A stretch of DNA of 64,000 nt from Macrostomum lignano (Eukaryota), in assembly GCA_002269645.1 (NCBI GenBank), contig NIVC01000264.1:62001-126000 (forward strand). The letters are read 5' to 3'. The notes beneath the pieces are model-generated. The model made no database searches and was not told where the DNA came from. It saw only the letters and a list, made by a program, of their open reading frames with translations. Positions 1,327-62,169 of the stretch are shown here, one piece after another (the first letter of the stretch is position 1; each line of letters opens with the position of its first letter). Made by a program: the position numbers and the translations under genes.

Positions 1327-2020
<694 letters not shown>

Positions 2021-11194: not shown

Positions 11195-11485
<291 letters not shown>

Positions 11486-12529
11486 ACTCAATAATTCGGG
11501 CCATGCAGGCTGGCACAATCGCCATCAGCATTGTGTGCAAATTGAGAAGCGAAACTCGAGCCGCACCGCAGGAACCCGCGCATCTCCTGCATACTAATTA
11601 TGCTAATTAGGTCGAATCCACTATGCAATCACTTGCCCGCAGGCTGGGGGGGGGGGGAGGCTGGGAAGCTGTGGTCTCTGGTTCGATTATCCGCTAGAAT
11701 TTTGTCATTTGGTTTCGAATTGCAGGCGGTCGGACCGTGAGATAAGAGATTGCCAACACGGCGATGCAAAAATATGCATAAGAGATTCGTTCCCGATGCA
11801 GGGTCCAGTCTCCCATCGAAGCCTCTCTTGATTTTTTTATTATTTTTTGGCTTGAAACAAATGAGACAAGGCAGCTCAAAAGATCGATAGAGAGTCCGCA
11901 TAGGCGGTGTCCGCCAGCCCCTCGATATCCGGCGCTGCAGTATCGATTTTCAGCGCGGCCAGGAATTGCGGACTGCGGACTAAGCAGCAGCCCCCGGCGA
12001 TGGGGAGCGGAGAAACTGGGCTGCCCGGGGACTCGTGTTTCTATTCAGTCAGTCTTGCCCTGGATCAGCCTCCGTCATAATCGCTTCCTCCCCGCCGACT
12101 CCTCTCCGGCGGTGTCGGTTTCTGTTTGCAGTTCAGCGCCACAGTTGTTGCAGGGGAGGTGGGAATTGAATTTCAAATTTGCTCAGCCTGCGGTTTGGGA
12201 ATTGGGGAAGGGGATGGGGATCGGAGGGGGGTTGCTGCTGATGTTGAACTCTTTGGTCTTGGAGAAGACTCCAGTTTTTAAGACAAGATATCCTTTTTAT
12301 GAGCGGATATGCTTTCTTTTATACTCTTTGCTCCCGTTCTCTCCCATCTCTCTGTATGCCTTTGAGCTCAGCTTTGCATCCGGTATCCATTTTCGAACGT
12401 GTTCCGAAAGAAACGCGAAGCAATTAAAATAAACGGGGATAAAACTTTGAACCCGGATATGGAAATTGATGGGTTGAGAACTCAGCCTATCTCTTGTCCG
12501 TCTGCTTTCTTTCCCTCATCTCTCTCAAT

Positions 12530-18319: not shown

Positions 18320-20212
18320 CGCGGACCCCGGGATTATAAGCAACTGGACTGGAAGGAGAGATAATTTTATTTTCCACCCTATACCACAGGGGGGCACTGC
18401 TTCTCCCTTCTGTCCCCCAGTTGGGGGCTTGGGGTGTTTGTTCCACGAGGGAAGGAAAGCTTTCGTTGTACACTAAAAAGCTCTCTCTACAATGTACATT
18501 CCAATTCGTCCCTGTTCGTATTTCGGCCGGGGTTGTGGCCTATAGTGGACTACAAGAATCGCTGCACTGTACAGCATGTCCTAAAACGATCTCTCCTTGT
18601 TTTTGCTAACTAGCACTCATAATTGTCTGATCGACTCTGAGAGTGAAGACGACTAATGGTGAAGGCTTGCTCAGCGTACGGATGCTCAAATCGAGCAAAT
18701 GGAACTGTCGCAGGAGTCAGCTTCCATAGTTTTCCATGGAAGGACCCGCTTCTGAAAAAGTGGAAGCGAGCCAACCCAAGTCAGGAGTTTGAGCCAACAA
18801 AAAGCTCAAGGATTTGCTCCAAACATTTTCATCCGGACGACTTCCATGGATACAAACGTCGCACGTAAGAAGAGCAAGGAGCAACTACTAAGACGCCTTT
18901 TGAAACAAGGGGCTGTGCCGTCCATCTTTCCCAACGCTCCATCCTACCTGTCCTCTGAAAAAAAGCCGCAGAGATCAACAGCGGCGACTTCTTCTGAACG
19001 TCTGGAGCGGGAACTCAGTGCCCTGCAAAGCAGCATCGACACCTTTCAGGAAGCCGACTCAATTGCTGATTGCAGCCTACACGACGTGCGCTCCAGACTT
19101 GATCAGGAGGAGAGTAAGCCAGCAGGTTTTCAATTCTCTCTGTGTGACGGCAAGCTGTGCATTTACATGCTTGAGATGGAGCCCAATTTTCATGTTGCGT
19201 GCTATATTTGCTTGGCTGAAGACCTCACCGTCACATTTGGATTCCGTGGATTGCCTCTGAAGATGAATAGGTTTGTCGATCTGTTGACTAATGGCAAGGT
19301 CTCGACCCTTAGCCAGCTTGTTAACATCATGTCGAGAATCAAGATTTTGAAGGAGGATACGGCCGAGTCTGACGATAAAGTTTCGCATCTGCTGGATATG
19401 GCTGAAGACCTGTTAGAAGAGGTGGAAGAGCTGGCAGATAACCGAACGGTGAGCTTTGCTTTGGAGCAATTGAAGTTGAGTAGGAAGCCAGCCTCTGCTC
19501 GCAGGTACTCGCAGGAGCTTCTCGTTTTTGCGTATTTAATTTACTCAATCAGTGCCGCTGCATACAAGACCATGCTGGAGCAGGAGGCACTTTGTCTGCC
19601 ATCTGATCGCACTTTGAGGTCCATCACAGCTAGAGTTGGTTCTAAGGTAGGTCTGGATAACGAAGGCTATCTTAAACTTCGGGCATCTAAGCTTGAACAA
19701 GTTGAGAAAGTTGTCGTCCTTGCGATCGATGAGATCTACATTGCCAATCGGGTTGAGTACAACAATGGTCAGTTGAATGGACTGGATGCAGATGGAGCTA
19801 CAGCAAAGACACTCTGCTGCTTCATGATCCGCTCTGTAGCGAGTCAATACAAGGACATGATTGCGATGCATGCCGTTGCAACATTGACTGCGAAGAAACT
19901 TACAGAATGGTTTCACCAGGCGATGAGTGTCTTAAGAAAGTTGAATTTCACCGTTTGTGCAGTGTGCGTTGATAATGCCGCAGTGAACCGCAAGTTTGTC
20001 AGAGGCCTGTGCGGCAACAACTTCAACCCTTGCTTCATGGATGAAGTAACTGGACAGCCTGTTTTTTTGCTGTTCGATCCAGTGCATTTATGTGATTTGT
20101 GTTAGCAATTCATGCCCCTCTGCAGATAAGCTGTGTAGGAAACTAATGCCCCCTTGTGGTATGGGTTATTTTTAGCCTTCCAGTCCAGTTGCTTATAATC
20201 CCGGGGTCCGCG
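18320..20212 (+). mobile_element. P-superfamily (THAP9-like) DNA transposon, internally deleted
   Basis: Perfect 37-bp TIRs CGCGGACCCCGGGATTATAAGCAACTGGACTGGAAGG (18320-18356 and 20176-20212), flanked by a 7-bp direct repeat GATGGAG (18313-18319 and 20213-20219). Encloses a THAP-transposase ORF. Confidence 0.9.
18656..20097 (+). pseudogene. THAP-domain P-element transposase, frameshifted near 18845 and truncated after the DxxH motif
   Basis: THAP C2CH (CSAYGC...FHSFP...W...ICSKHF...AVPSIF), then AIDEIYI, CVDNAAVN and FDPVHL. One extra C (TTC C ATG) splits ORFs 18656 and 18789. The C-terminal catalytic half is absent. Confidence 0.9.
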
Positions 20213-21836: not shown

Positions 21837-24800
21837 GCCACACAACACCATCCAAATCAGCAAGGAGGACATCATGAGGATCCCGGGCGGTCCTGATTGG
21901 ATAGTTGCCGGAGACTGGAATGCGCACCACTCGATGTGGGACAATCTAGTGGCGGAGGATAACAGAGGCGTGGCGGTGATGGAGTGGGCGGACCTCCACG
22001 AGATGTCGGTGCTTAACGACGGAAGTTGCACTAGGAGCAGCAAGGACGGCAGGTTCCACTCGAGTCCGGACGTCGCCTTCTGCCATACCCTGGACGAGGC
22101 ATGGGAGTGGCAGGCTACCAGCGCCCTCAGCTCCGACCACAAACCGGTGCTAATCACTAGCAGAGGAGACTGCACCGATAAAGCTAAATCGAGGAAACTC
22201 GTCAGCTGGAATTGGAAGAATGCTGATTGGACGGCATTCCGGGAAGAAATCCGGACAAGCATTGCCGAGGGCGGAGAAGAGCTGCGGGTGATATCGACCA
22301 GCATAGCTGAGAGAAGGTTACGGGACATCATCACGAATGCCGCCAGAAAAGCGATCGGCGTGGTTGTTAGGAGGACCAGGAACCGGGACTGCCTCACCGA
22401 AGACATTAGGGCGGACCTGGTGGAGAGAGACGCCATTAGGACGGAGAAAGGAGAGTCGTCTGAGGAGTGGAAAGAAGCAGAAGCGGCCATCTCCGAGAAG
22501 ATTAAAGAGCACAAAAGGCAGGCCTGGAGGCAGCACCTCGCCACGAATGCGACCAACGCGAAGATGTGGACGGTCCTTAAGCAACTCAAAGGCACCCTAG
22601 CCAAGACGGAAAGCCAAGGGCTGACTCACCAAGGCCGCACATACATATCGGCGAGAGCCAAAGCCAACATCTTCGCGAAGACCTACGCGAAGGTCAGCGA
22701 TGTGAGAATTGAGAAAAGCCACCGCTGGGCCCGCCGCGACGTCAACGCCCGCCTAAGAGAGAGCAACATCTCGCCAGACCCGGAAGATTGCCAACCGCTC
22801 ACGCTGAACGAGCTCCAGGACGCTCTCCATGATATGAATGCCAACAAAGCTGCCGGGATGGACCACATCCACCCCAGGCTCCTCCGGGAACTGCCAACCG
22901 AAGCGCTAGAGGCCGTCCTGCAGCTGTTCAACAGGCTATTCGCTGAAGGATCCGCGCCACAAAATTGGCGCACGGCTAGGATCATCCCCCTGCTCAAGGG
23001 AGGGAAACCAAAGCAGGAAATCGGATCCTACAGGCCCGTGAGCCTAACATCCTGTCTAAGCAAGTGGATGGAGCGCATCATAGTCCGAAGAATCACCCAC
23101 AAGCTGGAAAGTGCCGGGAGACTCAGCGATTGCCAGGCGGGCTTCCGTGCGGGCAGGTCAGCTGAAGACCAGCTCTTGAGGTTGACTCAAGCCATCGAGG
23201 ACGCCTTCAAGAGGGGAGACATTACGCTGCTCACGCTGTTTGATTTCGAACGTGCCTTTGATAAGGTGTGGCGTGACGCCCTCCTAATCAAGATGCTAGA
23301 CAAGGGTGTGGGGCCGCGGATTGTCCGTTGGATCCAAGGATGGCTAACGAACCGCCTGGCCTGTGTCAACGTTGAGGGAACCGATGGTCGGCGAGAGCAA
23401 TTCAAACAGGGGCTTCCCCAAGGCTCGGCCCTGTCGCCCATCCTCTTCGTGATTTTCGTAGACGACCTTCTCAACAGCCTGAGCAAGCTCCCCGGAGTGG
23501 AAGTCAGCGGCTTTGCAGACGACCTGGCCACCTGGTCATGCGCTACACGAGCTGAGGAGGCGACGAACATGCAACAGGCGGCAGCGAACGTCGTGAGCGA
23601 ATGGAGCCGGAAATGGCTGCTCCCAGCCGCTGCGGCTAAGTGCACCACCACCCTCTTTACGCAAGGAAAGCCCAGCGAACCGAGCCGGTCCGTACGATTC
23701 AACAATGACGACCTCCGATGGGACCCGAACCCCAAGTTCCTGGGTCTCACGTACGACCGGAGCCTCCGTTTCACCCAACACGTTGCTAACGTCATCGAGG
23801 CGTGTCGCAGCAGGGTGAACCTCATGCGCAGGCTCGCAGGCAGCGACTGGGGTGGGAAAGCAACCTACTCCGGCAGACGCATACCGCCCTCATCCGCAGC
23901 CGCATCCTCTACGGGGCCTGCGCGTGGACGCCCTGGCTCAGCGAGGAAAGCTGGCGGCGGCTCGAAGTCCTAGATAGAACGGCAGCTCGAATAGTGAGCG
24001 GTCTAGTCCAAACTACACCGCTAGACGCCCTGAAAGCCGAGAGTGATATTGGACCCCTAAGAACGACGTGCGAGATCCGTTGGGCGGCGAAGCTCGACCG
24101 ATGGCTCCGCCTCAATGAGGAATCGGCCAGGTACAAAATGACCAGGAATGAGGAAGCTCGCCGACAGCGAGGTGGCAGCACTAGACGCGACTGGAGATCG
24201 GCGGCTGGGGAGCTACTGGCCAGGTTCAAGTTAGACGAGGTCGCCAGGACTGGAGATGGGCATCCTCTACCCCCCTGGAAGAAGGGCAACGCGAAGGACT
24301 TCCACGCTGATGCCTGCCGGGCGCCGAGCCAGGAGGAAAACCTGTCGCTGGCCCACCAGCTTCTGCGCACCGAAGGACCGCCCCCGGATGTGGTCATCTT
24401 CTCTGACGGATCCGTGTCGGACGGTTGCGGCGGAGGAGGAGCCATCATTGTGAAGCCAGAACCAGGCGACCCAGGATGCAGAGGAGAGATACTTGCTGAA
24501 ATGACACGGCCGGCTGGTCGCCCGTGTTCCTCACTCCAAGCCGAGCTCAGAGCGATGGAAGGCGCTCTGAACCTCCTAGAGCACCTCAGAGTGGAGAAGA
24601 GGAGAGTCTGGGTGATCACGGATAGCAAAAGCAGTCTGCAGGCGCTCCGCGGGCACTCAAGGAACCCGATAGCTGTGGAAATTCAAGCCCTGGCCGCCCG
24701 CCTCCGCGAGGGCGGAGTCACCTTCGAGTGGAGATGGGTGCCCGCGCATTGTGGCCTCTGGGGCAACGAGGAGGCTGACCGTCTGGCAGGAGCAGCCGTT

Positions 24801-25270
24801 CGCTCTCAGCAGGAGGACACCCCGGTCCTCGCCAGCGTGGTTGTGAAGCAGCTAGCTCGGGAGCTGAAGGCCAGTGAGACGCGCTCGCACCAGCGCTCCC
24901 GCGATACTTACGGCACCAGAGGACCGGCCAAACACCCCTGTTACGGCAGCAGAGAAGAGGCGACCAGCTTCATGAGAATGAGAACCGGTCACTCACTCGA
25001 GCTCGGAGCCTATTGCAAGCGTATAAAGAAGGTGGAGAACGGCCACTGCAGGATGTGCCGCGGCGAGGAGGAAACCGTGTCCCACATAGTCCAATGCCCG
25101 GCAACTTTCCGTCAGAGGAGTGAGTGGGACGTGATGGCGCTGAACGACCTAAACCGTTCCAGCGAAGGCGTCCTCAAGTTCTGGCGGTGGTATAGGAGTC
25201 ACCCACCACTGGAGCAGCCCTCACCGTTGGTAGCGTGAGTAGCAACAACAACAACAACAACAACAACAGC
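21837..25270 (+). mobile_element. 5'-truncated non-LTR retrotransposon (I-group, Ingi/Nimb-like): partial APE endonuclease, RT, RNase H, C-terminal CCHC; (CAA)n tail
   Basis: GDWNAHH...SSDH (APE), YRPVSLTS, QAGFR, FDFERAFD, GLPQGSALSP, FADD (RT), FSDGS/AEL/TDS/WVPAHCGLWGNEEADRLA (RNase H), CRMC...ETVSH...C. One 1-nt deletion in a G run near 23850 links ORFs 21874 and 23802. (CAA)8 tail 5 nt after the stop; (CAA)5CAGC duplicated at both ends. Confidence 0.93.
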
Positions 25271-36860: not shown

Positions 36861-37394
36861 TATCGCTTCCTTCCTATACTTCGTTCGCTCTCTCCTCCGC
36901 TATCAACCTTTTCTCAGTCTCTCATCCTGTCAAGATCATCGTTGCTAGTTTTTCTCTCTTATCTCAAACAAGTCTCTTTTTTCCGTTTCACTGGGAAAGC
37001 GGCACTAATCCACCAAGTTTTTACCTATAGGCGCGCAATTCAAAGCCCCGCCATTCGCTAAGCAAGCAAAACGCAGGCTAAAATCGAGTTCAGACTAATC
37101 CACGGTAGCGAAGATGTCCCGCGGGAATCTGGAACGGCCTGGAAATTTGAATTTATCACCTTTGCTTCCCACCCTCACTTCGCGTGTCGCTTACCGCGAA
37201 ACAAAGCGCAAACGCGGTCATAAAACTTTTACCACTTTGTGTGGCAATCAAATTATATATATTATTATCTCAGCAAAGTGCGTTGAACTGCCTATGATTC
37301 TGATCCCATGATCTGATTTGGGATTCCATCAGCACCTGAGAGACAAAGAAGTAGCGACATTTTGCACCTGAAGCCTGCGTATCACGACCGTCAT

Positions 37395-37401
37395 GTCTGT
37401 G

Positions 37402-37437
<36 letters not shown>

Positions 37438-37616
37438 AGGTCTGCCTGTCTTAGTGTCTGTCTGTCTGTCTGTCTGTCTGTCAGGTCTGCCTGTCTTAGT
37501 GTCTGTCTATCTGTCTGTCTGCTTGCCTGTCTGTCTGTCTGTCTGTCAGGTCTGCCTGTCTTAGTGTCTGTCTGTCTTAGTGTCTGCCTGTCTGCCTGTC
37601 TGCCTGCCTGCCTGCC

Positions 37617-37676
<60 letters not shown>

Positions 37677-37680
37677 AGTC
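37395..37680. repeat. (TCTG)n-based microsatellite
   Basis: Directly visible. Confidence 0.97.
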
Positions 37681-38254
37681 AGTCCGCCAGCGTATATATG
37701 CCTCTCAGTTGATAATTTTAATATAACAATATCCCCACCTTGCCAATCAGTTGGAGTTCCAGATTTCGTGACTCGACGATTCCAGTTTGGCGTGACCAAT
37801 CCCTTTTAGCAATCAATTTTTGCACCCAAAAATAAATTAAAATGCAGGTGTTACTGTCTACAGCGGACTTTTGCAGTCTGACACACTCAGTAAGTAAATT
37901 GGTCCCATTCGCTCAATCCTTGCTCCCGATGGTGCTTTGCGCTGAACTAAATTCTGTGTGAAGTGCTTGCTCTCCCAGCTAGTTCCCTGGTCCAACTAGA
38001 AGTTTTAGTCTCAGAGAAATCGATGCAACCCAGATGTGCAGCAGCTTCCGTGTGTGGCAACCCCCACCACTGCTGGGGCACTTTGACTTGGCAAATATTT
38101 GACAAGTGCGAAGAGGCCCTTTTCCTCCTCTTCTCTGCCCTGTCTGCAGATCCCAAAAATTTGGACCCTTCTGAATATTTTGTACAAAGTGCACCGCTTT
38201 AGGCTGGGACTTTAGTTTTAATCTATACAGCCCCCAGCGCCAGCTGTGTAGCCT

Positions 38255-38662: not shown

Positions 38663-39252
38663 TCAAACGGGTTCACGAGTACTTTTTAAACCGGCTTCAC
38701 AATGATGTCTGTTCGGGACAATTTGTGATTTTTTCGAATAGCTAGTAAACAGAGTTAAGAGGCCTGCATCCTTCACTTCAGCATATGATGCAGTGCTTTG
38801 GCAGCCAATCTGTTCCAGAGTAACCAGGCAATCAGCTCTGGTCAGGGACACCCCGATTCGCTCTTGTCCTCACCCCTAATGAGCATCGAGATTATCGACA
38901 GGCTCAGTAATGACTGCTTCACATCCGACAGCCTCAATGCCTGCTTGGCAGGGAACAAACTCGAAGCACAAGCTCGAATGCCGGTTCTTCGCTAGCGTGA
39001 ATCAGGTTCAAGTTTAAGAACAAAAGTTTTGTTAATAAACTTTCTTACAACTGTTTCCAGTGCAACGGAACTGAAGCTGCTACCTGGGTTCAAATCTTCA
39101 AAATAACAAATTTTAGTAACTGGCTTATCAGGCAGATCTGCTGGAATCTGATGATTCATTGTAGTGGAAAATTAACTGCTCTGATTCTGATTCTGAAATA
39201 GCGGCTTGGAATAAAAATAGACATACTGACTTCGGGTTTGGCAAGTGGGTTA

Positions 39253-39880
<628 letters not shown>

Positions 39881-40892: not shown

Positions 40893-41690
<798 letters not shown>

Positions 41691-54166: not shown

Positions 54167-56529
54167 CTCTGAGCTGCTCAGGGGAACCAGAATAAAAAAA
54201 TCTAGGAAGACGACTGCCTACGGTATAAACATTTTCCTTACCAAGTTTATCAATATTTTTCTTGGTGCTTATTTTTGTGTTACCTCCTGTTAGGTTTTGT
54301 AAAAGAACTCTTCCAGAGGTAAACTTGAATTTTTTATTGGGCATTGCTGATATTATAACAAATTGCTATTTTCATATTTTCCTTTTTAGAGCCACAGTGT
54401 GGCACGTTTATTTGCGTGTATTTTTACTTGCAGTAGCTAAAAAGGCTGTTTATATTATCTTACCATTTTTTAGAAACAAAGAAAAAATCAGCTCAAAGGA
54501 ATATGTAATCTTTTATTCCATCAGTTTTTTTTTCATTTTCAGGCTTTTTATGCGTCTGAGCGTTTTTTTATTTTTTTGCTACATGTACATAAGCGGGAAA
54601 AAAGACTTTACACCCCTTCCACATTTAACTTTTCTTTTATTCAAAATCATGCAACGGACAATTTCTAACGCAACTGCATGTTCATTTTTTAAATTCATCA
54701 GATCATGTTCTCCGTTTTAGGCAGTGTGGAATCTTATGAATGCTTTCTGTAGTATTTGTGTACATATAACAATAAAACTGACAATGAAGAATTATGAACA
54801 ATACATACCATCCTGTGACAAAAAATTAATGTAGCTGTTTCTCATGTTTTGTTTCTAAATTGGAATGCATATGCTTCAATTTATCCGTTAACATTCTAAT
54901 CGCTTGTTTTTCAAACAGTTTTTTACTCTATAATTTTATATTTATTTTTTTTAGAAAACACTTATCATCTTATCTTTGTTGTACCGTAGTTTTACATGTA
55001 CATTCACATGTGAATTCACAAGCGTCCTCCCCTCTAAGGACGACTGAAGTAGGCTCTACAATTAGCGACATCATGCCTGTCTTCATTGGCTCTGATCTGA
55101 TAAAGTGATTTACTAGCCAAATTTTTTACAGAGCAGAAAAATTATTGCAGTCTTAATAAGAATAACGTCTGAATAAGTAGATATATTTAAATGAAACAAT
55201 ATAAAGCGTTCTTTTACCGGTTGTATTAATGCTAACTAAAACAAAATACATGAATGCAGACAGTAAGCTTGCATTAAAATTGCAATTTTTGTTTTTAATA
55301 TATAAACTTTCAATAAACTTTGTTTTATATAGATGAAATTGGATAAGAAACTTTAAATAAATTTTTATTACCACCTTTAAAGGTGAAAGTTTCGTAGAAC
55401 TAACTGATCTCTACCTATAAGTGGACGTGGTACAACTTACGAGGTTAAGTTGAGTTGAGTTGAGTTAAGGTAAAAATGAAGGTTGACTTTAAGATGTTGA
55501 ATTTTATTTTACATGCTTTTTGTTTTTACGAATGTATTGGCCCCAAAGTTCACTTACAGTAAGCGAACAAAAATTATAGGTAATCAAATCAAATTCTATA
55601 AAATTAATAAACATTTTAAATCTCAGACTTACATTCAAAGCTAAAAGATTAATATTACAAACGTTAATTTTTTCCAAATCTTTGTTCATAAGCGCATTAA
55701 TTTTGTTCTAGCCGTCTCATCTACAATATTGCGATTGAAATTTAATTTTTAATGCTTTAAATAAAATGCAAATCGTGTTTTGTATTTCTTTTAAAATAAT
55801 AAAGTTTTTAGATAAAGCAAAATATGTACCTTTAGAATTTATTTCTAATTCTATGTATTTTTAAATACAGATAAGTCAGACAGTTTGCTCTAACTAAACA
55901 AAGTAGCATTTTTGGTCTATTAATTTACAACTAGAATTCTATTTAATGGCATCTCTAGAGAGTTATTTTGAATATTTATAGCTAAATGTTTTGATGCTTG
56001 ATTTAATTTTTTCTTAAAATATAGAAATGCTGCCTTTGATTTTAGGAACAAAGTTTGTTAGTAACAGACATTTCAGACTTAGGAAAATAAGTTCTATAAA
56101 CAAAATACTGTTTTATTAGGCAGTGGGATAGCCAGGAGTTTGCCTTGCTGGGCAAGAGTGTAAAAGGCAAGATTTTAGCTTTCAAACTTGTCTACCTACT
56201 ATCACTTTTTTGTTGAAAATTGCAAAAATTAACATTCAAAGTTTATGGCTGGTTGTCTGAGGGGGGTCTGAAACTGAAAACTTAAACATTAATGTAAAGG
56301 ACATATTATTTCCCTAAGAAAAAATATAGGAATTCATACAATAAGCTTTTATGTTAAGTTTTAGTCAACCTTTTTCTAGAACTTTCTACTCCTGTACTCG
56401 TATGATAATTTCATGCACAGACTGGTCGCAAACCAGATGGTCATGGCAACATGACAGAGAGATGCAGTGGCTGCAATAGAATTTTAAAAGTAAAAAATTC
56501 AGTTCTCAACTATACTACTAAGCCAAAGT

Positions 56530-58081
56530 ATGGACAATGTTGACCTCGAACTGACACCAGACCTACTTGAGCAGCAGCAAATTCCTCTAAGCGCCATCAG
56601 CCAAACCCTGCTTTTGTTGCTGAAGCCATTGGAAGATGCAACAACGCGAATTGTCACAGTTGATGGGGTGGAGCTGCTGGACAATTTACAGGGACTGGCC
56701 GAACTGCTAATTTTCAAAGGTGAGATGTGTTGTATTGAGTTGAACTTTTGCCATTAGTATGCTATTGCAGTGCAAGTCTGTCTCCAAATTGTACTTTATG
56801 TGCATGGGCCACCACAATAGTTATCCTTTGACAGGATCCTAAAGACAACGCAATTGAGCTTGAATCTAGTAAACTACCCGAAGAAGCAACCATGCCCTAA
56901 GAATCTAAGAAGACCCCAAGCTACCCTAAGAATCGACCCCAAGCTACCCTAAGAATTGACCCCAAGCTACCCTAAGAATCGACCCCAAGCTACCCTAAGA
57001 ATTGACCCCAAGCTACCCTAAGAATCGACCTAAAACTACCCTAAGAATCGACCCCAAGCTACCCAAAGAATCGACCCCAAGCTACTCTAAGAATCGACAC
57101 CAAGCTACCCTAAGAATCGACCCCCAAGCTACCCTAAGAATTGACCCCAAGCTACCCTAAGAATCGACCCCAAACTACCCTAAGAATCGACCCCAAGCTA
57201 CCCTAAGAATCGACCCCAAGCTACCCTAAGAATCGACCCCAAGCTACCCTAAGAATCGACACCAAGCTACCCTAAGAATCGACACCAAGCTACCCTAAGA
57301 ATCGACCCAAGCTACCCTAACTAACATTAACCTAACCCTATAAAACCAGGCTGCGTCACCGACTGGGGTCTGGCTGGTACGGCCTCGGTTAGCGCGGTGC
57401 TTGACACCTGGGGCCGGCAGGATCAGCGCGCTAGCTGTGCCGTCCTGTGGCGCCTGCTGGTGTCCCTCGGCCGGTTCGATTTGCTGCGCAGCATCCGCGG
57501 CCGCCTGCTGAGAGACGCGGAGCTGTACATGCAGAGCGAGCAGCGGGAGCGGCGGCGGCTGCGGGAGGCCACACAACAGCCGTCAGCCGCTCCCGAGCGG
57601 CGCTTTGACGTCTATGTGAGCTACTCCGAGACCTCGCAGGAGGACTCAGCGAGGGCGGCCGAGATTGTGGCCCGGCTGCGGGACAGCGGCTTCGATGTCA
57701 TCAGCGCCGAGGACCGGCTGGCCGGTGGCTTCTCGCTGGACGAATTTCACGATATTGTGCGCCGGTGAGAGAGAGAAGCGTGTTTTGGCGGCCTGAGGTT
57801 ATAAATGCAATTGAGTCACTGAGTCACTCCAACGCAGGTGCAGCCGGGTGCTGGTGCTGTGGTCCCGGGCCTACGAGGCGGAGCCAGAGCTGCGCTACGA
57901 GCTTAGCCTCTCCCGCTCCATGGACCCGGCCGCCGATCGGCGTCGAGTGATCCCCGTCCTGCTGGACGACACGCAGCGGCCCGGCCACCTGATCGGCATC
58001 CGGGCTGTTCGATTCGGCAGCCGCAACTGCATTCAGCAGCTTGTCAACTCTTTGAGAGATGGAAATGGACGGCGTAGCTGA
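56530..58081 (+). CDS. MYD88: MyD88-like death-domain + TIR adaptor, 282 aa. Exons 56530-56719, 57350-57764, 57838-58081.
   Basis: Death domain (IPLSAI...GLAELL...VLDTW...LLVSLGRFDLL...Y), TIR box 1 RFDVYVSY, box 2 region EDRLAG, IVRR|CSRVLVLWS..Y, RRVIPV. Phases 1 and 2 are consistent; 190+415+244 = 849 nt. Confidence 0.88.
56870..57320. repeat. 23-bp minisatellite (TAAGAATCGACCCCAAGCTACCC)
   Basis: Fills MyD88 intron 1. Confidence 0.95.
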
Positions 58082-58126
58082 GTGAGACAGATTGGCGTTC
58101 AGTGTTGACAGTATTATCAGTGAGTT

Positions 58127-58550
58127 GGCTGTGCGGAGTGAAGTGGCTGTGCGGAGTGAGGTGGCTGTGCGGAGTGAGGTTGCTGTGCGGAGTGAGGTGG
58201 CTGTGCGGAGTGAGGTGGCTGTGCGGAGTGAGGTGGCTGTGCGGAGTGAGGTGGCTGCACGGAGTGAGGTGGCTGTGCGGAGTGAGGTGGCTGAACGGAG
58301 TGTGGTGGTTGTGCGGAGTGAGGTGGCTGCACGGAGTGAGGTGGCTGAACGGAGTGTGGTGGTTGTGCGGAGTGAGGTGGCTGCACGGAGTGAGGTGGCT
58401 GCACGGAGTGAGGTGGCTGTGCGGAGTGAGGTGGCTGCACGGAGTGAGGTGGCTGTGTGGAGTGAGGTGGCTGAACGGAGTGTGGTGGCTGTGCGGAGTG
58501 AGGTGGCTGTGCGGAGTGAGGTGGCTGCACGGAGTGAGGTGGCTGTGCGG
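58127..58550 (+). repeat. 18-bp minisatellite (GGAGTGAGGTGGCTGTGC), left arm of an inverted pair
   Basis: Directly visible, about 45 nt after the MyD88 stop. Confidence 0.97.
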
Positions 58551-59364
58551 AACGTCTCGAGATCGAACTTGCTCGCATGTATTTGCAGATTAATTTCTTC
58601 TCTTTGTAATTCATTCGTGATAAAAAGCTGCCTGTTCTTGCTTCCAATCCGATTAAATGCTTGCATGTATTTTATTTGCTATTTACAATATTTTGGTTCT
58701 TTTTACATCGCTACTATTTGATGAACAGTAGTATAACCAAATTTGGTGCCTTATTTTTTTGTGGGTATTTTGATGCACTTACTGTCCTTTTGCGATAATA
58801 GAGTTAAGGTAGTCGTAAATAAATTTATGTATCATATAATCGTATGATATATGAACTCCAATCATTTCATTTGGTATTTCACCCTTTTAAATAGCTGTTT
58901 TCAAACAAGAGTTGAATAAATTTTAACTGCGACCTCTTCTAAAGTTATTTTGTTTTTACAAAATATAGTGCTACTGTGTGCAATAGAAAGTATTGATAGA
59001 AAAATATGTTGATCGATTTTGACGCGATAACTTTGTGCTTTTTGTAGAGTCAAAAATGAATTTTTTTATTTGTTCTACTCTTTATGATCTTAAGCAATTA
59101 GGTGCGCTGGGAGAGTGGACTGTGTCAGGGAATTGTTATACTCGTAGTAGTACAGTAATGTTTGCAAAGTGTTTGCGAATCGTGTATTTAAAAAAAATGT
59201 GGGGAAGTCGCGAAATTCAACAGCGATAGACTGAAAATTAAAGTCTTTATCGTCTGACAAATTCGTAAGAAAGCTGATGAACTGGACTGCCGTTGGCTTG
59301 AATCTTTACTACTGCGATGTGCAAGGAAATTTCTGAATTCTTTGTACTCGTATCAGCATTAAGC

Positions 59365-59848
59365 CACCCGCGCAGCCACCTCGTTCTGCATAGCCACCTC
59401 ACTCCGCACAGCCACCTCACTCCGCTTAGACACCTCACTCCGCACAGCCACCTCACTCCGTGCAGCCACCTCACTCCGCTTAGACACCTCACTCCGCACA
59501 GCCACCTCACTCCGCACAGCCACCTCACTCCGCTTAGACACCTCACTCCGCACAGCCACCTCACTCCGCTTAGACACCTCACTCCGCACAGCCACCTCAC
59601 TCCGCTTAGACACCTCACTCCGCACAGCCACCTCACTCCGCACAGCCACCTCACTCCGCACAGCCACCTCACTCCGCACAGCAACCTCACTCCGCACAGC
59701 CACTTCACTCCGCACAGCCATCTCACTCCGCACAGCCACCTCACTCCGCACAGCCACCTCACTCCGCACAGCCACCTCACTCCGCACAGCAACCTCACTC
59801 CGCACAGCCACTTCACTCCGCACAGCCATCTCACTCCGCACAGCCACC
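59365..59848 (-). repeat. Same 18-bp minisatellite in inverted orientation (GCACAGCCACCTCACTCC), right arm
   Basis: Reverse complement of the 58127-58550 unit. Confidence 0.97.
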
Positions 59849-60118
59849 GCATATGGCTTGGAATGCATGCTCTTCTGATTGAACCATGTCCAGAATATCG
59901 CAACTCTCCCATTGATAATCGTGGTTAATTCCCACAATTTGATGAGAATTAATAGAAAGTTCAACAGTAAAAAGCAGAATAATTTTCACTCTGGAAAAAT
60001 GTGCTCTAAATTGCTGTTTAAGTGAGGAAAAGCATCGCCCGGATAGAGTTACAGGGGAGATAGAATTAGTCTCGGGGTGCAAACCGGATTCCAATGCACC
60101 CAGCAAGAACGCCAGCAG

Positions 60119-61469
60119 CTAACTGCTTGATGCAGTCTGGTTCATCAGCCGCTTCTCGCAGAGCACTCGCTTCTCGAATATGTAGCCGCCTGTGACCTCG
60201 TCTCTCACCTGGCGCCAATCGGTGTTCAGGTCCGTCTGCTCCCAGGATGCGCCGCCACCGCCTGCGCCACTGACACCGCCTCCTCCGCTGCCGCCGTCTC
60301 CGCCACCAACGTCTTCACCAGCGCTGCCGCTTTCGCCGCCTGCGTCGCCGCTCGCCTGCTGCTGCTTGGCGACATTGTCCTGATCGGACACGTAGCAATG
60401 GTAGCCGGCCGGGCAGGCGCAAGCGAATTTCACGTCAACTGGCCCGTCCTCCGTTCGCTTTCGCTTCCTGGCGCAGGTGCCGCCGATCAGCTTGTTGTCA
60501 CTTTGCGTCTGAGTTCCCGGACTTTCCGCGCTGCTGCACTGGCCGAGCTTGCAGCCGAATTCGTAAACCCACTGCTCTGCCTCCAGGTGCCAGCCGAGTA
60601 GATAGAACAGTGGGGCCTGGATTGGTAATGGTTCAGTGTCTGGGGCCTGGATTGGCAATGGTTTAGTGTCTGGTGCCTGGATTGGTAATGGTTCAGTGTC
60701 TGGGGCCTGGATTGGTAATGGTTCAGTGTCTAGGGCCTGGATTGGTAATGGTTCTGTGTCTCGTGGGGCCTGGATTGGTAATGGTTCTGTGTCTCGTGGG
60801 GCCTGGATTGGTAATGGTCCTGTGTCTCGTGGGGCCTGGATTGGTAATGGTTCAGTGTCTAGGGCCTGGATTGGTAATGGTTCTGTGTCTCGTGGGGCCT
60901 GGATTGGTAATGGTTCTGTGTCTCGTGGGGCCTGGATTGGTAATGGTTCAGTGTCTGGTGCCTAGGTTGGCAATTTTTTCCAACTGTAGTATCTCCTCCG
61001 CACACTTTTAGTGTCTTAAGAGTCCGCCCAGCCTCACCCCGTTGGCTCCATCGGTGGGGGCAGGTGGGCAGCGGCAGTAGATCTGCTCCAACGCTGGCTC
61101 CCAACTGTTCCTCGGGCTCACAAAGACCGCCGCCTTGACGTCGCTGGGCCGGCAGGAGTGCACCTGACGGAAGTCGCTGCACTTGAGAAACTGCACCCGC
61201 ATCCGGGCGTACTCAAAGTGCTGCCACAGGAAGCTGTTGCCAGCCCGCAGGTCTACTGGGGCGCTGCAGTTGATGCAGCCGTTGCAGTAGCGGCCCTGGT
61301 CAATTACTTTGTCGGGGAATTGGATCACAGCGTTGCACACTCGCTCGCTGCCAAGGCATTCTGGCTCGGATTTTTTGCCTTTCTGACCGGCCGACACAGC
61401 TGGATAGAGGATGAGCATCAGGGCCGGTAGCAGCAGCAGCAGGATGTTGTACCGATAATTTGCTGTCAT
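60119..61469 (-). CDS. aos: Argos/giant-lens-like secreted three-finger protein, 309 aa in the short model. Exons 61469-61038 and 60616-60119.
   Basis: Signal-peptide-like N-terminus (ILLLLLPALMLILYPAVSA). 16 Cys grouped 6/4/6, with QFLKC, EQIYCRCP, YEFGC, RKRK and CACPAGYHC paralleling Drosophila Argos HYKMC, EQIVHCRCP, YLFAC, RKRQ and CQCPKGHRC. GGG|GTGAGG donor, phase 0. Confidence 0.82.
60611..60962. repeat. 30/33-bp minisatellite made of duplicated 3' splice-site units (minus strand CCAATCCAG|GCC)
   Basis: Units start at 60611, 60641, 60671, 60701 and 60731, followed by a mix of 33-bp and 30-bp variants. Confidence 0.95.
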
Positions 61470-62169
61470 GTCTGTTGGTCTGTCTAAGTCTAAGTTGGAT
61501 GTGTCTGTCTCTATGCATCCGCATATATACATATTTTGCGGGAGCATTTGCCCCCCCCCCACCCCCTGCTCCTCTCAGCGGCTGTGAGTGGCGCCGACCC
61601 GGTGCTGCCCGGGACCAGTGCGAGGCGAAGGGGGAAGCGGAGGTCATTAATTGATTGGCGAGGCAACTGGATGAGGGGCCGGGGCGATGGAGAGAGAGAG
61701 AGAGAGACCAGAAAGTAATGCAATCAAGTGCAGCTGGGTCGGGACCGAGCAGCGGTGTGTCTTTTTTCTGATGAAACTCCCCCCACCAGTTCGAGTCGGA
61801 AATGCAAAGTGGCGAATTTCTGGGGCTCATTGCAGTCTGGACCGCTCCCTCACGTCCCGAACTCGCCATTGGCAGGAGGCGAATGCGGCTCAGGTTCCCG
61901 AGGGAGCCGCCAGCGAGTCTGCGGGGAGTTCTGGGTGGCCTCTCAGCTGCTGGAAAAGTTTCTGCGGGGAAATGCGCGGAATAGCGGAGTGGAAGAGGGC
62001 AAATGGATGTCGGCAATGCGGGATAAGAGGTCTGCCTCCTCCCCGCAGACTTCGCTGAGGCTGACGCAAGTCCAGTTCTGCATCTCAGCAAGTTTCTGCT
62101 TGCATTATTGCTGCTTCACCCTGTTTTGCAAAATTTATGAGTAGCTGCGAAAGAGAAAGGTTGAGAAGT

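What the first reader, a model, noticed from the sequence alone, without database searches (positions are those of the whole stretch)
58082..60118. Convergent MyD88-like and Argos-like genes carry the same 18-bp array in their presumptive 3' UTRs, forming long inverted arms
Seen: an 18-mer array (GGAGTGAGGTGGCTGTGC) starts about 45 nt after the MyD88 stop. Its reverse complement (59365-59848) starts about 270 nt after the Argos-like stop, so both mRNAs would read the array in the same sense. The arms share rare variant units (GAAGTGG and GAGGTTG near the outer ends, GCTGCACGG internally) and a similar inner end (GTGGCT.TGC.GAACG), which points to inverted duplication or conversion rather than chance. 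This is the only minisatellite I saw twice in the window. The AT-rich spacer of about 810 nt has AATAAA on + (58818, 58915) and on - (59070-59065, 58676-58671). Inference: (a) a shared 3'-UTR element could co-regulate an immune adaptor and an EGF-ligand sink; (b) read-through by either gene would fold into a dsRNA stem of over 400 bp whose siRNAs could hit both mRNAs; or (c) this is a foldback-type transposon with tandem-repeat arms. No TSD was found at the outer ends.
Basis: partly seen in the sequence, partly recalled or inferred. Interest (0 to 1): 0.7.

Follow-up and report, generated by a model that had tools for sequence, protein, structure and literature searches.

The report
Inverted minisatellite pair between convergent genes
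Two copies of one 18-base tandem repeat face each other between the ends of two flatworm genes; this is a real inverted duplication of a fast-changing repeat, most likely with no function of its own.

Summary
An 18-bp array (GGAGTGAGGTGGCTGTGC) lies on the + strand at 58119-58551 (24 units). Its reverse complement lies at 59368-59851 (about 27 units). An 816-nt AT-rich spacer separates them. The best register is 433 nt at 91% complementarity.

The window is Macrostomum lignano, assembly GCA_002269645.1. Both gene calls hold:
- The upstream gene is a TIR adaptor whose best structural matches are MyD88.
- The downstream gene belongs to the Argos (giant-lens) family by profile search, E=2e-8.

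The arms share ordered rare variants at the outer ends and an AACG variant at the inner ends. Homology stops at the array edges, and there is no target-site duplication.

A second genomic copy of the locus has an identical arm A, but its arm B has only 12 units and a different interior. The arms therefore change by slippage or unequal exchange, with no visible constraint on length.

No poly(A) hexamer lies between either stop codon and its array, so both arrays are probably in 3' UTRs. That both mRNAs read the array in the same sense follows from the geometry.

Best reading: a local inverted duplication of a minisatellite that behaves as a neutral variable-copy-number repeat. A foldback-type transposon is the main rival. 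The regulatory and dsRNA ideas remain untested. Interest is low to moderate.

The parts
56530..58081 (+). MyD88-like gene coding region (282 aa; exons 56530-56719, 57350-57764, 57838-58081; stop TGA at 58079-58081). Its first intron holds an unrelated 23-bp minisatellite.
   Evidence: The exact protein is PAA86779.1/PAA92402.1 of Macrostomum lignano. The splice model reproduces the protein. Pfam TIR_2 E=8e-14, Death domain weak at E=0.047. The best PDB matches to the TIR part are MyD88, E=4e-3.
58082..58118 (+). 37-nt unique stretch between the MyD88-like stop codon and arm A, with no poly(A) hexamer
58119..58551 (+). Arm A: 24 units of GGAGTGAGGTGGCTGTGC. G-rich on the sense strand of the MyD88-like gene (53% G, GC skew +0.63).
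   Evidence: It is identical in the second genomic copy, L002.
58552..59367 (.). 816-nt AT-rich spacer (33% GC) holding every candidate poly(A) signal of both genes. It has no internal inverted symmetry and no coding capacity.
59368..59851 (-). Arm B: about 27 units of the same 18-mer read on the - strand, G-rich on the sense strand of the Argos-like gene. It holds a duplicated 6-unit outer block and GTGTCTAAGC variant units that arm A lacks.
   Evidence: In L002 it has only 12 units with a different interior.
59852..60118 (-). 267-nt unique stretch between the Argos-like stop codon and arm B, with no poly(A) hexamer
   Evidence: It diverges 2.6% between the two genomic copies.
60119..61550 (-). 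Argos-family gene coding region (annotated range; exon 2 at 60616-60119, exon 1 at 61547-61038; stop TAG at 60121-60119). Its intron holds an unrelated 30-33-bp minisatellite.
   Evidence: Gene range and splice model. A profile of 18 homologues hits PDB 3c9a 'Protein giant-lens' at E=2.2e-8. Two family members hit Pfam Argos PF11581.

Best explanation
The window is Macrostomum lignano. Two convergent genes, a MyD88-like TIR adaptor and an Argos-family secreted protein, have stop codons 2 kb apart. In that gap a single minisatellite that already had internal structure was duplicated once in inverted orientation. The ancestral array had rare variant units at one end, consensus units inside, and an AACG variant at the other end.

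Shown:
- The two arms have the same consensus unit.
- They carry the same rare variants in the same order at their outer ends, and the same variant at their inner ends.
- Homology stops at the array edges.
- The spacer is unique AT-rich DNA.
- After the duplication each arm changed on its own by gain and loss of units. This includes a 6-unit block duplication, 36-bp-period expansions and AACG-unit expansions. As a result arm B has 27 units in one genomic copy and 12 in the other.

Inferred:
- The duplication arose locally, by template switching or fold-back repair at a repeat that stalls replication, rather than by transposition.
- Each array is transcribed inside its own gene's 3' UTR, because every poly(A) signal lies in the spacer beyond it.
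- The common sense orientation in the two mRNAs follows from the geometry.
- The structure is a neutral, unstable variable-copy-number repeat with no regulatory role of its own.
For: - The arrays and the inverted register are real and far beyond chance.
- This is the only minisatellite duplicated among about 25 distinct arrays in the window.
- Unit maps show shared ordered variants at the outer ends and GGAACG/AGAACG at the inner ends. Permutation of unit order gives a joint P of about 4e-4. Three non-consensus unit types are shared, one of them a double substitution.
- There is no homology between the flanks and no target-site duplication.
- The spacer has no second copy in the window and no protein-family match.
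- All poly(A) hexamers of both genes lie in the spacer and none lies in the 37-nt or 267-nt outer flanks. This fits the spacer being the original intergenic DNA.
- Arm B has 27 units in one genomic copy and 12 in the other, with different interiors, while unique flanks differ by only 2-3%.
- The genome is known to be 15% simple and tandem repeats and to carry large recent duplications (PMC5730564). The window itself is 27% tandem repeat.
Against: - Genome-wide copy number of the 18-mer could not be checked, so a mobile origin is not excluded.
- A purely local template switch would usually copy some flanking unique sequence as well. None is seen.
- Arm A is identical in the two genomic copies, which could be read as constraint. 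However, it lies inside a 2.66-kb tract with no substitutions at all, which looks like recent gene conversion.
- No transcript, small-RNA or population data were available, so neutrality is inferred from length variation alone.
Confidence: 0.55

Rival explanations
1. The whole 1.73-kb unit (58119-59851) is a non-autonomous foldback-type DNA transposon. The two arrays would be long terminal inverted repeats made of tandem subrepeats, and the AT-rich spacer would be the middle domain. It would have inserted between the two genes before the locus was duplicated.
For: - The anatomy fits foldback elements: long inverted arms of tandem repeats, arms of unequal copy number, a non-coding middle domain, and variant units conserved at the outermost ends.
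- The Tetris description lists the same layout (PMC4079207).
- A P-element/THAP9-like transposase fragment lies elsewhere in the window at 18789-20105.
Against: - There is no target-site duplication and no unique terminal flanking domain. Inverted homology ends inside the array.
- No further copy of the array or spacer occurs in 64 kb plus 8 kb of other M. lignano sequence.
- There are no hits in metagenome or viral contigs, or among predicted proteins.
- The outer flanks (304 nt together) hold no poly(A) hexamer for either gene. An insertion would therefore have had to replace both genes' termination signals.
- Both genomic copies are filled, so no empty site is known.
Confidence: 0.2
2. The array is a shared cis-regulatory 3'-UTR element. 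It would be a multivalent G-rich binding platform for an RNA-binding protein or small RNA, co-regulating the immune adaptor and the EGF-ligand antagonist.
For: - Both arrays probably lie in 3' UTRs and would be read in the same G-rich sense, with 24 and 27 copies.
- Sense arms fold more stably than mononucleotide shuffles: -160 against -122 kcal/mol.
Against: - The same sense follows automatically from the geometry.
- Copy number and interior variants of arm B differ more than two-fold between the two genomic copies.
- No Rfam family matches.
- The window holds about 25 other minisatellites in introns and intergenic DNA, so arrays near genes are the norm here.
- No expression data link the two genes.
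Confidence: 0.08
3. Read-through transcription from either gene yields a long hairpin RNA with a stem of about 400 bp. Dicer would process it into siRNAs that target the arrays in both mRNAs, as at an hpRNA-type endo-siRNA locus.
For: - A + strand RNA covering 58082-59900 folds with 404 arm A-arm B pairs at -1116 kcal/mol. The - strand gives -1078 kcal/mol.
- RNAi by long dsRNA works in this species (my knowledge, not checked here).
Against: - Each gene meets 2-4 canonical or near-canonical poly(A) hexamers in the spacer before it reaches the opposite arm.
- The arms are only 89-91% complementary.
- Arm B is unstable in length.
- No small-RNA data were available.
Confidence: 0.07
4. The two arrays arose independently, by separate amplification of a similar short seed, or the structure is an artefact of long-read assembly such as a palindromic chimeric read.
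For: - Minisatellites arise very often in this genome.
- The assembly is based on PacBio reads (PMC5730564).
Against: - The consensus units are identical, three rare unit types are shared, and their order at the outer ends is the same.
- The structure lies inside contigs of 376 kb and 883 kb, has an 816-nt unique spacer, and is present in both contigs with different arm B sequences.
Confidence: 0.02

Closest known systems
Foldback (FB-type) transposons: Drosophila FB, Galileo, Tetris
   Same: Long inverted arms built of short tandem repeats. The two arms of one element differ in unit number. The middle domain is non-coding. The layout is described in PMC4079207.
   Different: There is no 7-10-bp target-site duplication, no unique outermost flanking domain, and no second copy or empty site in the sequence available. 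The spacer carries the poly(A) signals of both neighbouring genes.
Variable-number tandem repeats (minisatellites) in 3' UTRs, e.g. the 40-bp repeat in the human SLC6A3 3' UTR (from my knowledge)
   Same: A tandem array of a 10-100-bp unit just downstream of a stop codon. Copy number differs between copies of the locus, and variant units are interspersed in a pattern that records slippage or unequal exchange.
   Different: Here the same array is present twice in inverted orientation, one copy per convergent gene.
Hairpin-RNA (hpRNA) endo-siRNA loci of Drosophila (e.g. PMC10317233, listed)
   Same: A long inverted repeat able to fold into a stem of several hundred bp whose arms match mRNA sequences.
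   Different: hpRNA loci are dedicated transcription units whose arms derive from a target gene's coding sequence. Here the arms are minisatellites split between two convergent genes by several poly(A) signals, and no small RNAs are known.
Inverted Alu pairs in human 3' UTRs (from my knowledge)
   Same: Inverted repeats associated with 3' UTRs that can form dsRNA.
   Different: Both Alu arms lie in one 3' UTR. Here each presumptive UTR holds only one arm.

Membership tests
Foldback-type transposon | Long terminal inverted repeats containing tandem subrepeats | tested here: met
   Arms of 433 and 484 nt made of 18-bp units, 89-91% complementary
Foldback-type transposon | Target-site duplication (7-10 bp) flanking the element | tested here: not met
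   The longest direct match between the outer flanks is 5 nt and it is not at the junctions
Foldback-type transposon | Unique terminal (flanking) domain shared by both ends | tested here: not met
   Local alignment of the outer flanks scores no better than shuffles: 16 against a mean of 16.3
Foldback-type transposon | Multiple dispersed copies, or empty sites showing mobility | not testable with these tools
   No other copy in the window or in L002. Both genomic copies are filled. The M. lignano genome could not be searched. Metagenome, viral and protein searches gave 0 hits.
3'-UTR minisatellite (variable-copy-number repeat) | Tandem array of a 10-100-bp unit whose copy number varies between copies of the locus | tested here: met
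   Arm B has about 27 units in L001 and 12 in L002, with different interiors
3'-UTR minisatellite (variable-copy-number repeat) | Lies within the transcribed 3' UTR | tested here: inconclusive
   No AATAAA or common variant lies between either stop codon and its array or inside the arrays. All candidates lie in the spacer. No RNA 3'-end data were available.
hpRNA / endo-siRNA hairpin locus | Both arms in one transcript, and 21-22-nt small RNAs from the stem | not testable with these tools
   Only the folding potential was computed: 404 pairs, -1116 kcal/mol
MyD88 | C-terminal TIR domain | tested here: met
   Pfam TIR_2 E=8e-14 at residues 151-262. The best PDB matches are MyD88 TIR domains, E=4e-3.
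MyD88 | N-terminal death domain | tested here: inconclusive
   Pfam Death E=0.047, 14.3 bits, below the 22.6-bit cut-off. MyD88 death-domain chain 6i3n matches at E=0.27.
Argos (giant-lens) family | Sequence homology to the Argos cysteine-rich domains | tested here: met
   The single sequence gave no hit. A profile of 18 homologues hits 3c9a_A 'Protein giant-lens' at E=2.2e-8 over 142 profile positions, with CxCP motifs aligned. Two members hit Pfam PF11581.
Argos (giant-lens) family | Sequesters EGF-type ligands | not testable with these tools
   This is a biochemical property and was not addressed

The most novel reading that the evidence does not exclude
The inverted arms could act as a read-through sensor between two closely spaced convergent signalling genes. 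When either gene fails to terminate in the spacer, its transcript would fold into a stem of about 400 bp. The resulting siRNAs would match the 24-27 repeat units in both 3' UTRs. Termination failure would then be coupled to joint down-regulation of an innate-immune adaptor and an EGFR-ligand antagonist.
Probability: 0.05. Interest if true: 0.7.

Novelty: new member of a known kind. Interest (0 to 1): 0.3.

Why it matters
The case shows how minisatellites in a very repeat-rich flatworm genome can be duplicated in inverted orientation and then diverge within the time needed for 2-3% sequence divergence. It also shows that such structures can sit in the presumptive 3' UTRs of signalling genes.

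- If the 18-mer proves to be a dispersed foldback family, it would be a first description of such elements in this model flatworm.
- If the arms yield small RNAs, the locus would be a natural hairpin linked to two genes.
- Otherwise it is an ordinary, neutral structural feature. Its main use would be as a polymorphic marker, and as a caution for assembly and 3'-UTR annotation.

Tried and rejected
- Exact 30-nt unit-dimer scans of metagenome and viral contigs gave 0 hits. These collections do not hold this genome.
- A protein search with the five open translation frames of the unit, concatenated, gave no hit.
- Look-ups of the long ORFs that run through each arm found nothing on record.
- Look-ups of P0001 and P0003 gave nothing new: P0001 is not on record, and P0003 returned only the second locus again.
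- Single-sequence searches of the Argos-like exons against Pfam, PDB and the word-indexed protein database gave nothing. Only the exhaustive representative search followed by a profile worked.
- The Rfam scan of 56000-62000 gave no match.
- Pfam scans of the three spacer ORFs gave no match.
- Flank-to-flank alignments and the target-site-duplication search found nothing above shuffles.
- Literature searches for Macrostomum minisatellites or inverted repeats, and for Argos in flatworms, found nothing relevant.
- I considered an R-loop or G-quadruplex terminator role for the G-rich sense arms. I set it aside because the unit has only GG runs and no G3+ motifs. The arrays also lie upstream of the poly(A) signals, not downstream.
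- A coding read-through of the arrays was rejected. The MyD88-like reading frame meets TGA at 58106 and again in every unit.

Full report
**What is there**

Tandem Repeats Finder reports two 18-bp arrays with reverse-complementary consensus units:
- 58119-58551, 24.1 copies, unit AGTGAGGTGGCTGTGCGG
- 59368-59848, 26.7 copies, unit CCGCACAGCCACCTCACT

With up to three mismatches the 18-mer occurs 49 times, all inside these two blocks. Shuffles give 0.15. The best inverted register is 433 nt at 91% complementarity. The spacer (58552-59367) is 816 nt at 33% GC, against 63-64% GC in the arms.

The window carries about 25 different minisatellites. Tandem repeats cover 27% of it. Self-BLAST shows that only this minisatellite occurs twice; the other recurrences are tetranucleotide or low-complexity arrays. 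These are the variant units, the inner-end motif, the AATAAA positions and the absence of a target-site duplication. Only small corrections of distance were needed.

**Where it comes from**

A partial protein, P0001, identical to the first exons of the upstream gene, belongs to a cluster that also holds the 282-aa P0002 (PAA86779.1/PAA92402.1), annotated as a TIR-domain protein of Macrostomum lignano. That 282-aa protein is encoded on two contigs of assembly GCA_002269645.1:
- L001 (NIVC01000264.1) is identical to the window; window coordinate = L001 coordinate + 46529.
- L002 (NIVC01000052.1) is a second copy of the locus.

The genome paper reports 15% simple and tandem repeats. It also reports 180 Mb of duplicated blocks at 95% identity or more, caused by extra large chromosomes in the sequenced line (PMC5730564). 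This explains the second copy.

**The genes**

The upstream gene has three exons that reproduce the 282-aa protein. It has a clear TIR domain (TIR_2, E=8e-14) and a weak death-domain signal (E=0.047). Its best solved-structure matches are MyD88. "MyD88-like" is therefore reasonable, though the death domain is not established.

The downstream gene gave nothing as a single sequence. An exhaustive search found 19 relatives. The named ones come from M. lignano, molluscs and nemerteans. A profile of 18 of them hits PDB 3c9a "Protein giant-lens", which is Argos, at E=2.2e-8. Two members touch Pfam Argos. "Argos-like" is therefore supported at the level of homology. Its function was not tested.

**Anatomy of the arms**

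Each arm was read in the G-rich sense from its outer end:
- Arm A runs GAGtTGG, GAAGTGG, consensus, GAGGTTG, then three consensus units. Its interior is rich in GCTGCAC, GCTGAAC and GTGTGGTGGTTG variants. It ends in GGAACG.
- Arm B runs GAGaTGG, GAAGTGG, GAGGTTG, then three consensus units. This 6-unit block occurs twice. It is followed by alternating consensus and GTGTCTAAGC units and one GCTGCAC unit. It ends in AGAACG plus a partial unit.

Three non-consensus unit types are shared, one of them a double substitution. Random unit order would place GAAGTGG before GAGGTTG within the first four units of both arms with P of about 4e-4. The arms therefore descend from one array that already had this polarity.

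Homology does not extend beyond the arrays. The outer flanks and the two spacer halves align no better than shuffles, and there is no direct repeat at the junctions.

**The second copy**

In L002 arm A is identical. Arm B has only 12 units: one copy of the outer block, four consensus units, three AGAACG units and one more consensus unit. It has no GTGTCTAAGC units. At least three separate expansion or contraction events therefore distinguish the two arm B versions, while nearby unique DNA differs by 2.6-2.9%.

Arm A's identity says nothing about constraint. It lies inside a 2,659-bp tract (56530-59188) without a single substitution, flanked by about 2-3% divergence on both sides. That pattern looks like recent gene conversion between the copies.

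**Transcripts (inferred only)**

No AATAAA, ATTAAA or common single-base variant lies in the 37 nt before arm A, in the 267 nt before arm B, or inside either arm. All candidates are in the spacer:
- + strand: 58619, 58652, 58818, 58915
- - strand: 59310, 59251, 59188, 59070

Each array is therefore probably part of its gene's 3' UTR, and each gene can terminate before reaching the other arm. Both mRNAs would carry the G-rich sense (GC skew +0.62 to +0.63). Any inverted duplication between convergent genes produces this arrangement.

An uncleaved read-through RNA would form 404 inter-arm pairs at -1116 kcal/mol. No Rfam family matches the region.

**Interpretation**

The best-supported account is a single, array-limited inverted duplication of a minisatellite, followed by independent slippage or unequal exchange in each arm. 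The result behaves as a neutral variable-copy-number repeat.

A foldback-type transposon is the main rival. Its layout fits (PMC4079207). However, two defining features were tested and not met: the target-site duplication and the unique terminal domain. The outer flanks also lack any poly(A) signal for either gene, which is awkward for a single insertion. Copy number across the genome is the decisive missing datum and could not be obtained.

The co-regulation and hairpin-siRNA ideas are possible but have no positive evidence. The more than two-fold length difference of arm B between the copies argues against a dosage-sensitive role.

**Verdict**

The feature is real and was correctly described. 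It is a new example of known kinds of structure: an inverted, foldback-like minisatellite pair and a variable-copy-number repeat in a 3' UTR. Interest is low to moderate unless RNA or genome-wide data change the picture.

Noticed in passing
window 56530-59188 (L001 10001-12659 against L002 10001-12658): This 2,659-bp tract covers the whole MyD88-like gene, arm A and 78% of the spacer. It has no substitution between the two genomic copies (one indel in the intronic 23-mer array). The DNA on both sides differs by 2.0-2.9%. It looks like a recent gene-conversion or recombination tract that ends about 180 nt before arm B.
   Followed up: partly
window about 54794 (L002 position 8249): Homology between the two genomic copies stops here. 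The first 8.2 kb of L002 has no match anywhere in the window. The duplicated block therefore has a breakpoint, or L002 a large insertion, 1.7 kb upstream of the MyD88-like gene.
   Followed up: partly
whole window: Tandem repeats cover 27% of the window (17.2 kb, of which 13.5 kb has period 10 or more). There are about 25 distinct minisatellites, each with its own unit, mostly inside introns of a teneurin gene. The published genome average is 15%.
   Followed up: partly
window 1327-2019, 11195-11487, 37394-37684, 39251-39876, 40893-41688: Long (ATCT)n and (GTCT)n tetranucleotide arrays recur in both orientations across 40 kb. One array changes from GTCT to ATCT units within itself.
   Followed up: no
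window 1-50177 (- strand): A teneurin gene (NHL, TTR, FN-plug and EGF domains) spans most of the window. Its introns hold a non-LTR retrotransposon (endonuclease, reverse transcriptase and RNase H, 21874-25238 +). They also hold a P-element/THAP9-like transposase fragment (18789-20105 +).
   Followed up: partly
window 60119-61550 (-) and proteins P0003-P0020: The Argos (giant-lens) family has uncharacterised homologues in a flatworm, in molluscs (Haliotis, Octopus, Bulinus) and in nemerteans (Lineus, Tubulanus). NCBI names one Haliotis member 'U-scoloptoxin(11)-Ssd2a-like'. No paper linking Argos to flatworms was found.
   Followed up: partly
window 60611-60974 against L002 13803-14378: The 30-33-bp minisatellite in the Argos-like intron also differs in length between the two copies (364 against 576 nt). 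Arm B is therefore not the only array that varies.
   Followed up: no
window 61547-61550: The annotated range of the Argos-like gene in L001 gives 336 codons only if it starts one codon upstream of the ATG, at CAG. The copy in L002 is annotated as 335 aa starting at the ATG. This is probably an annotation quirk.
   Followed up: no
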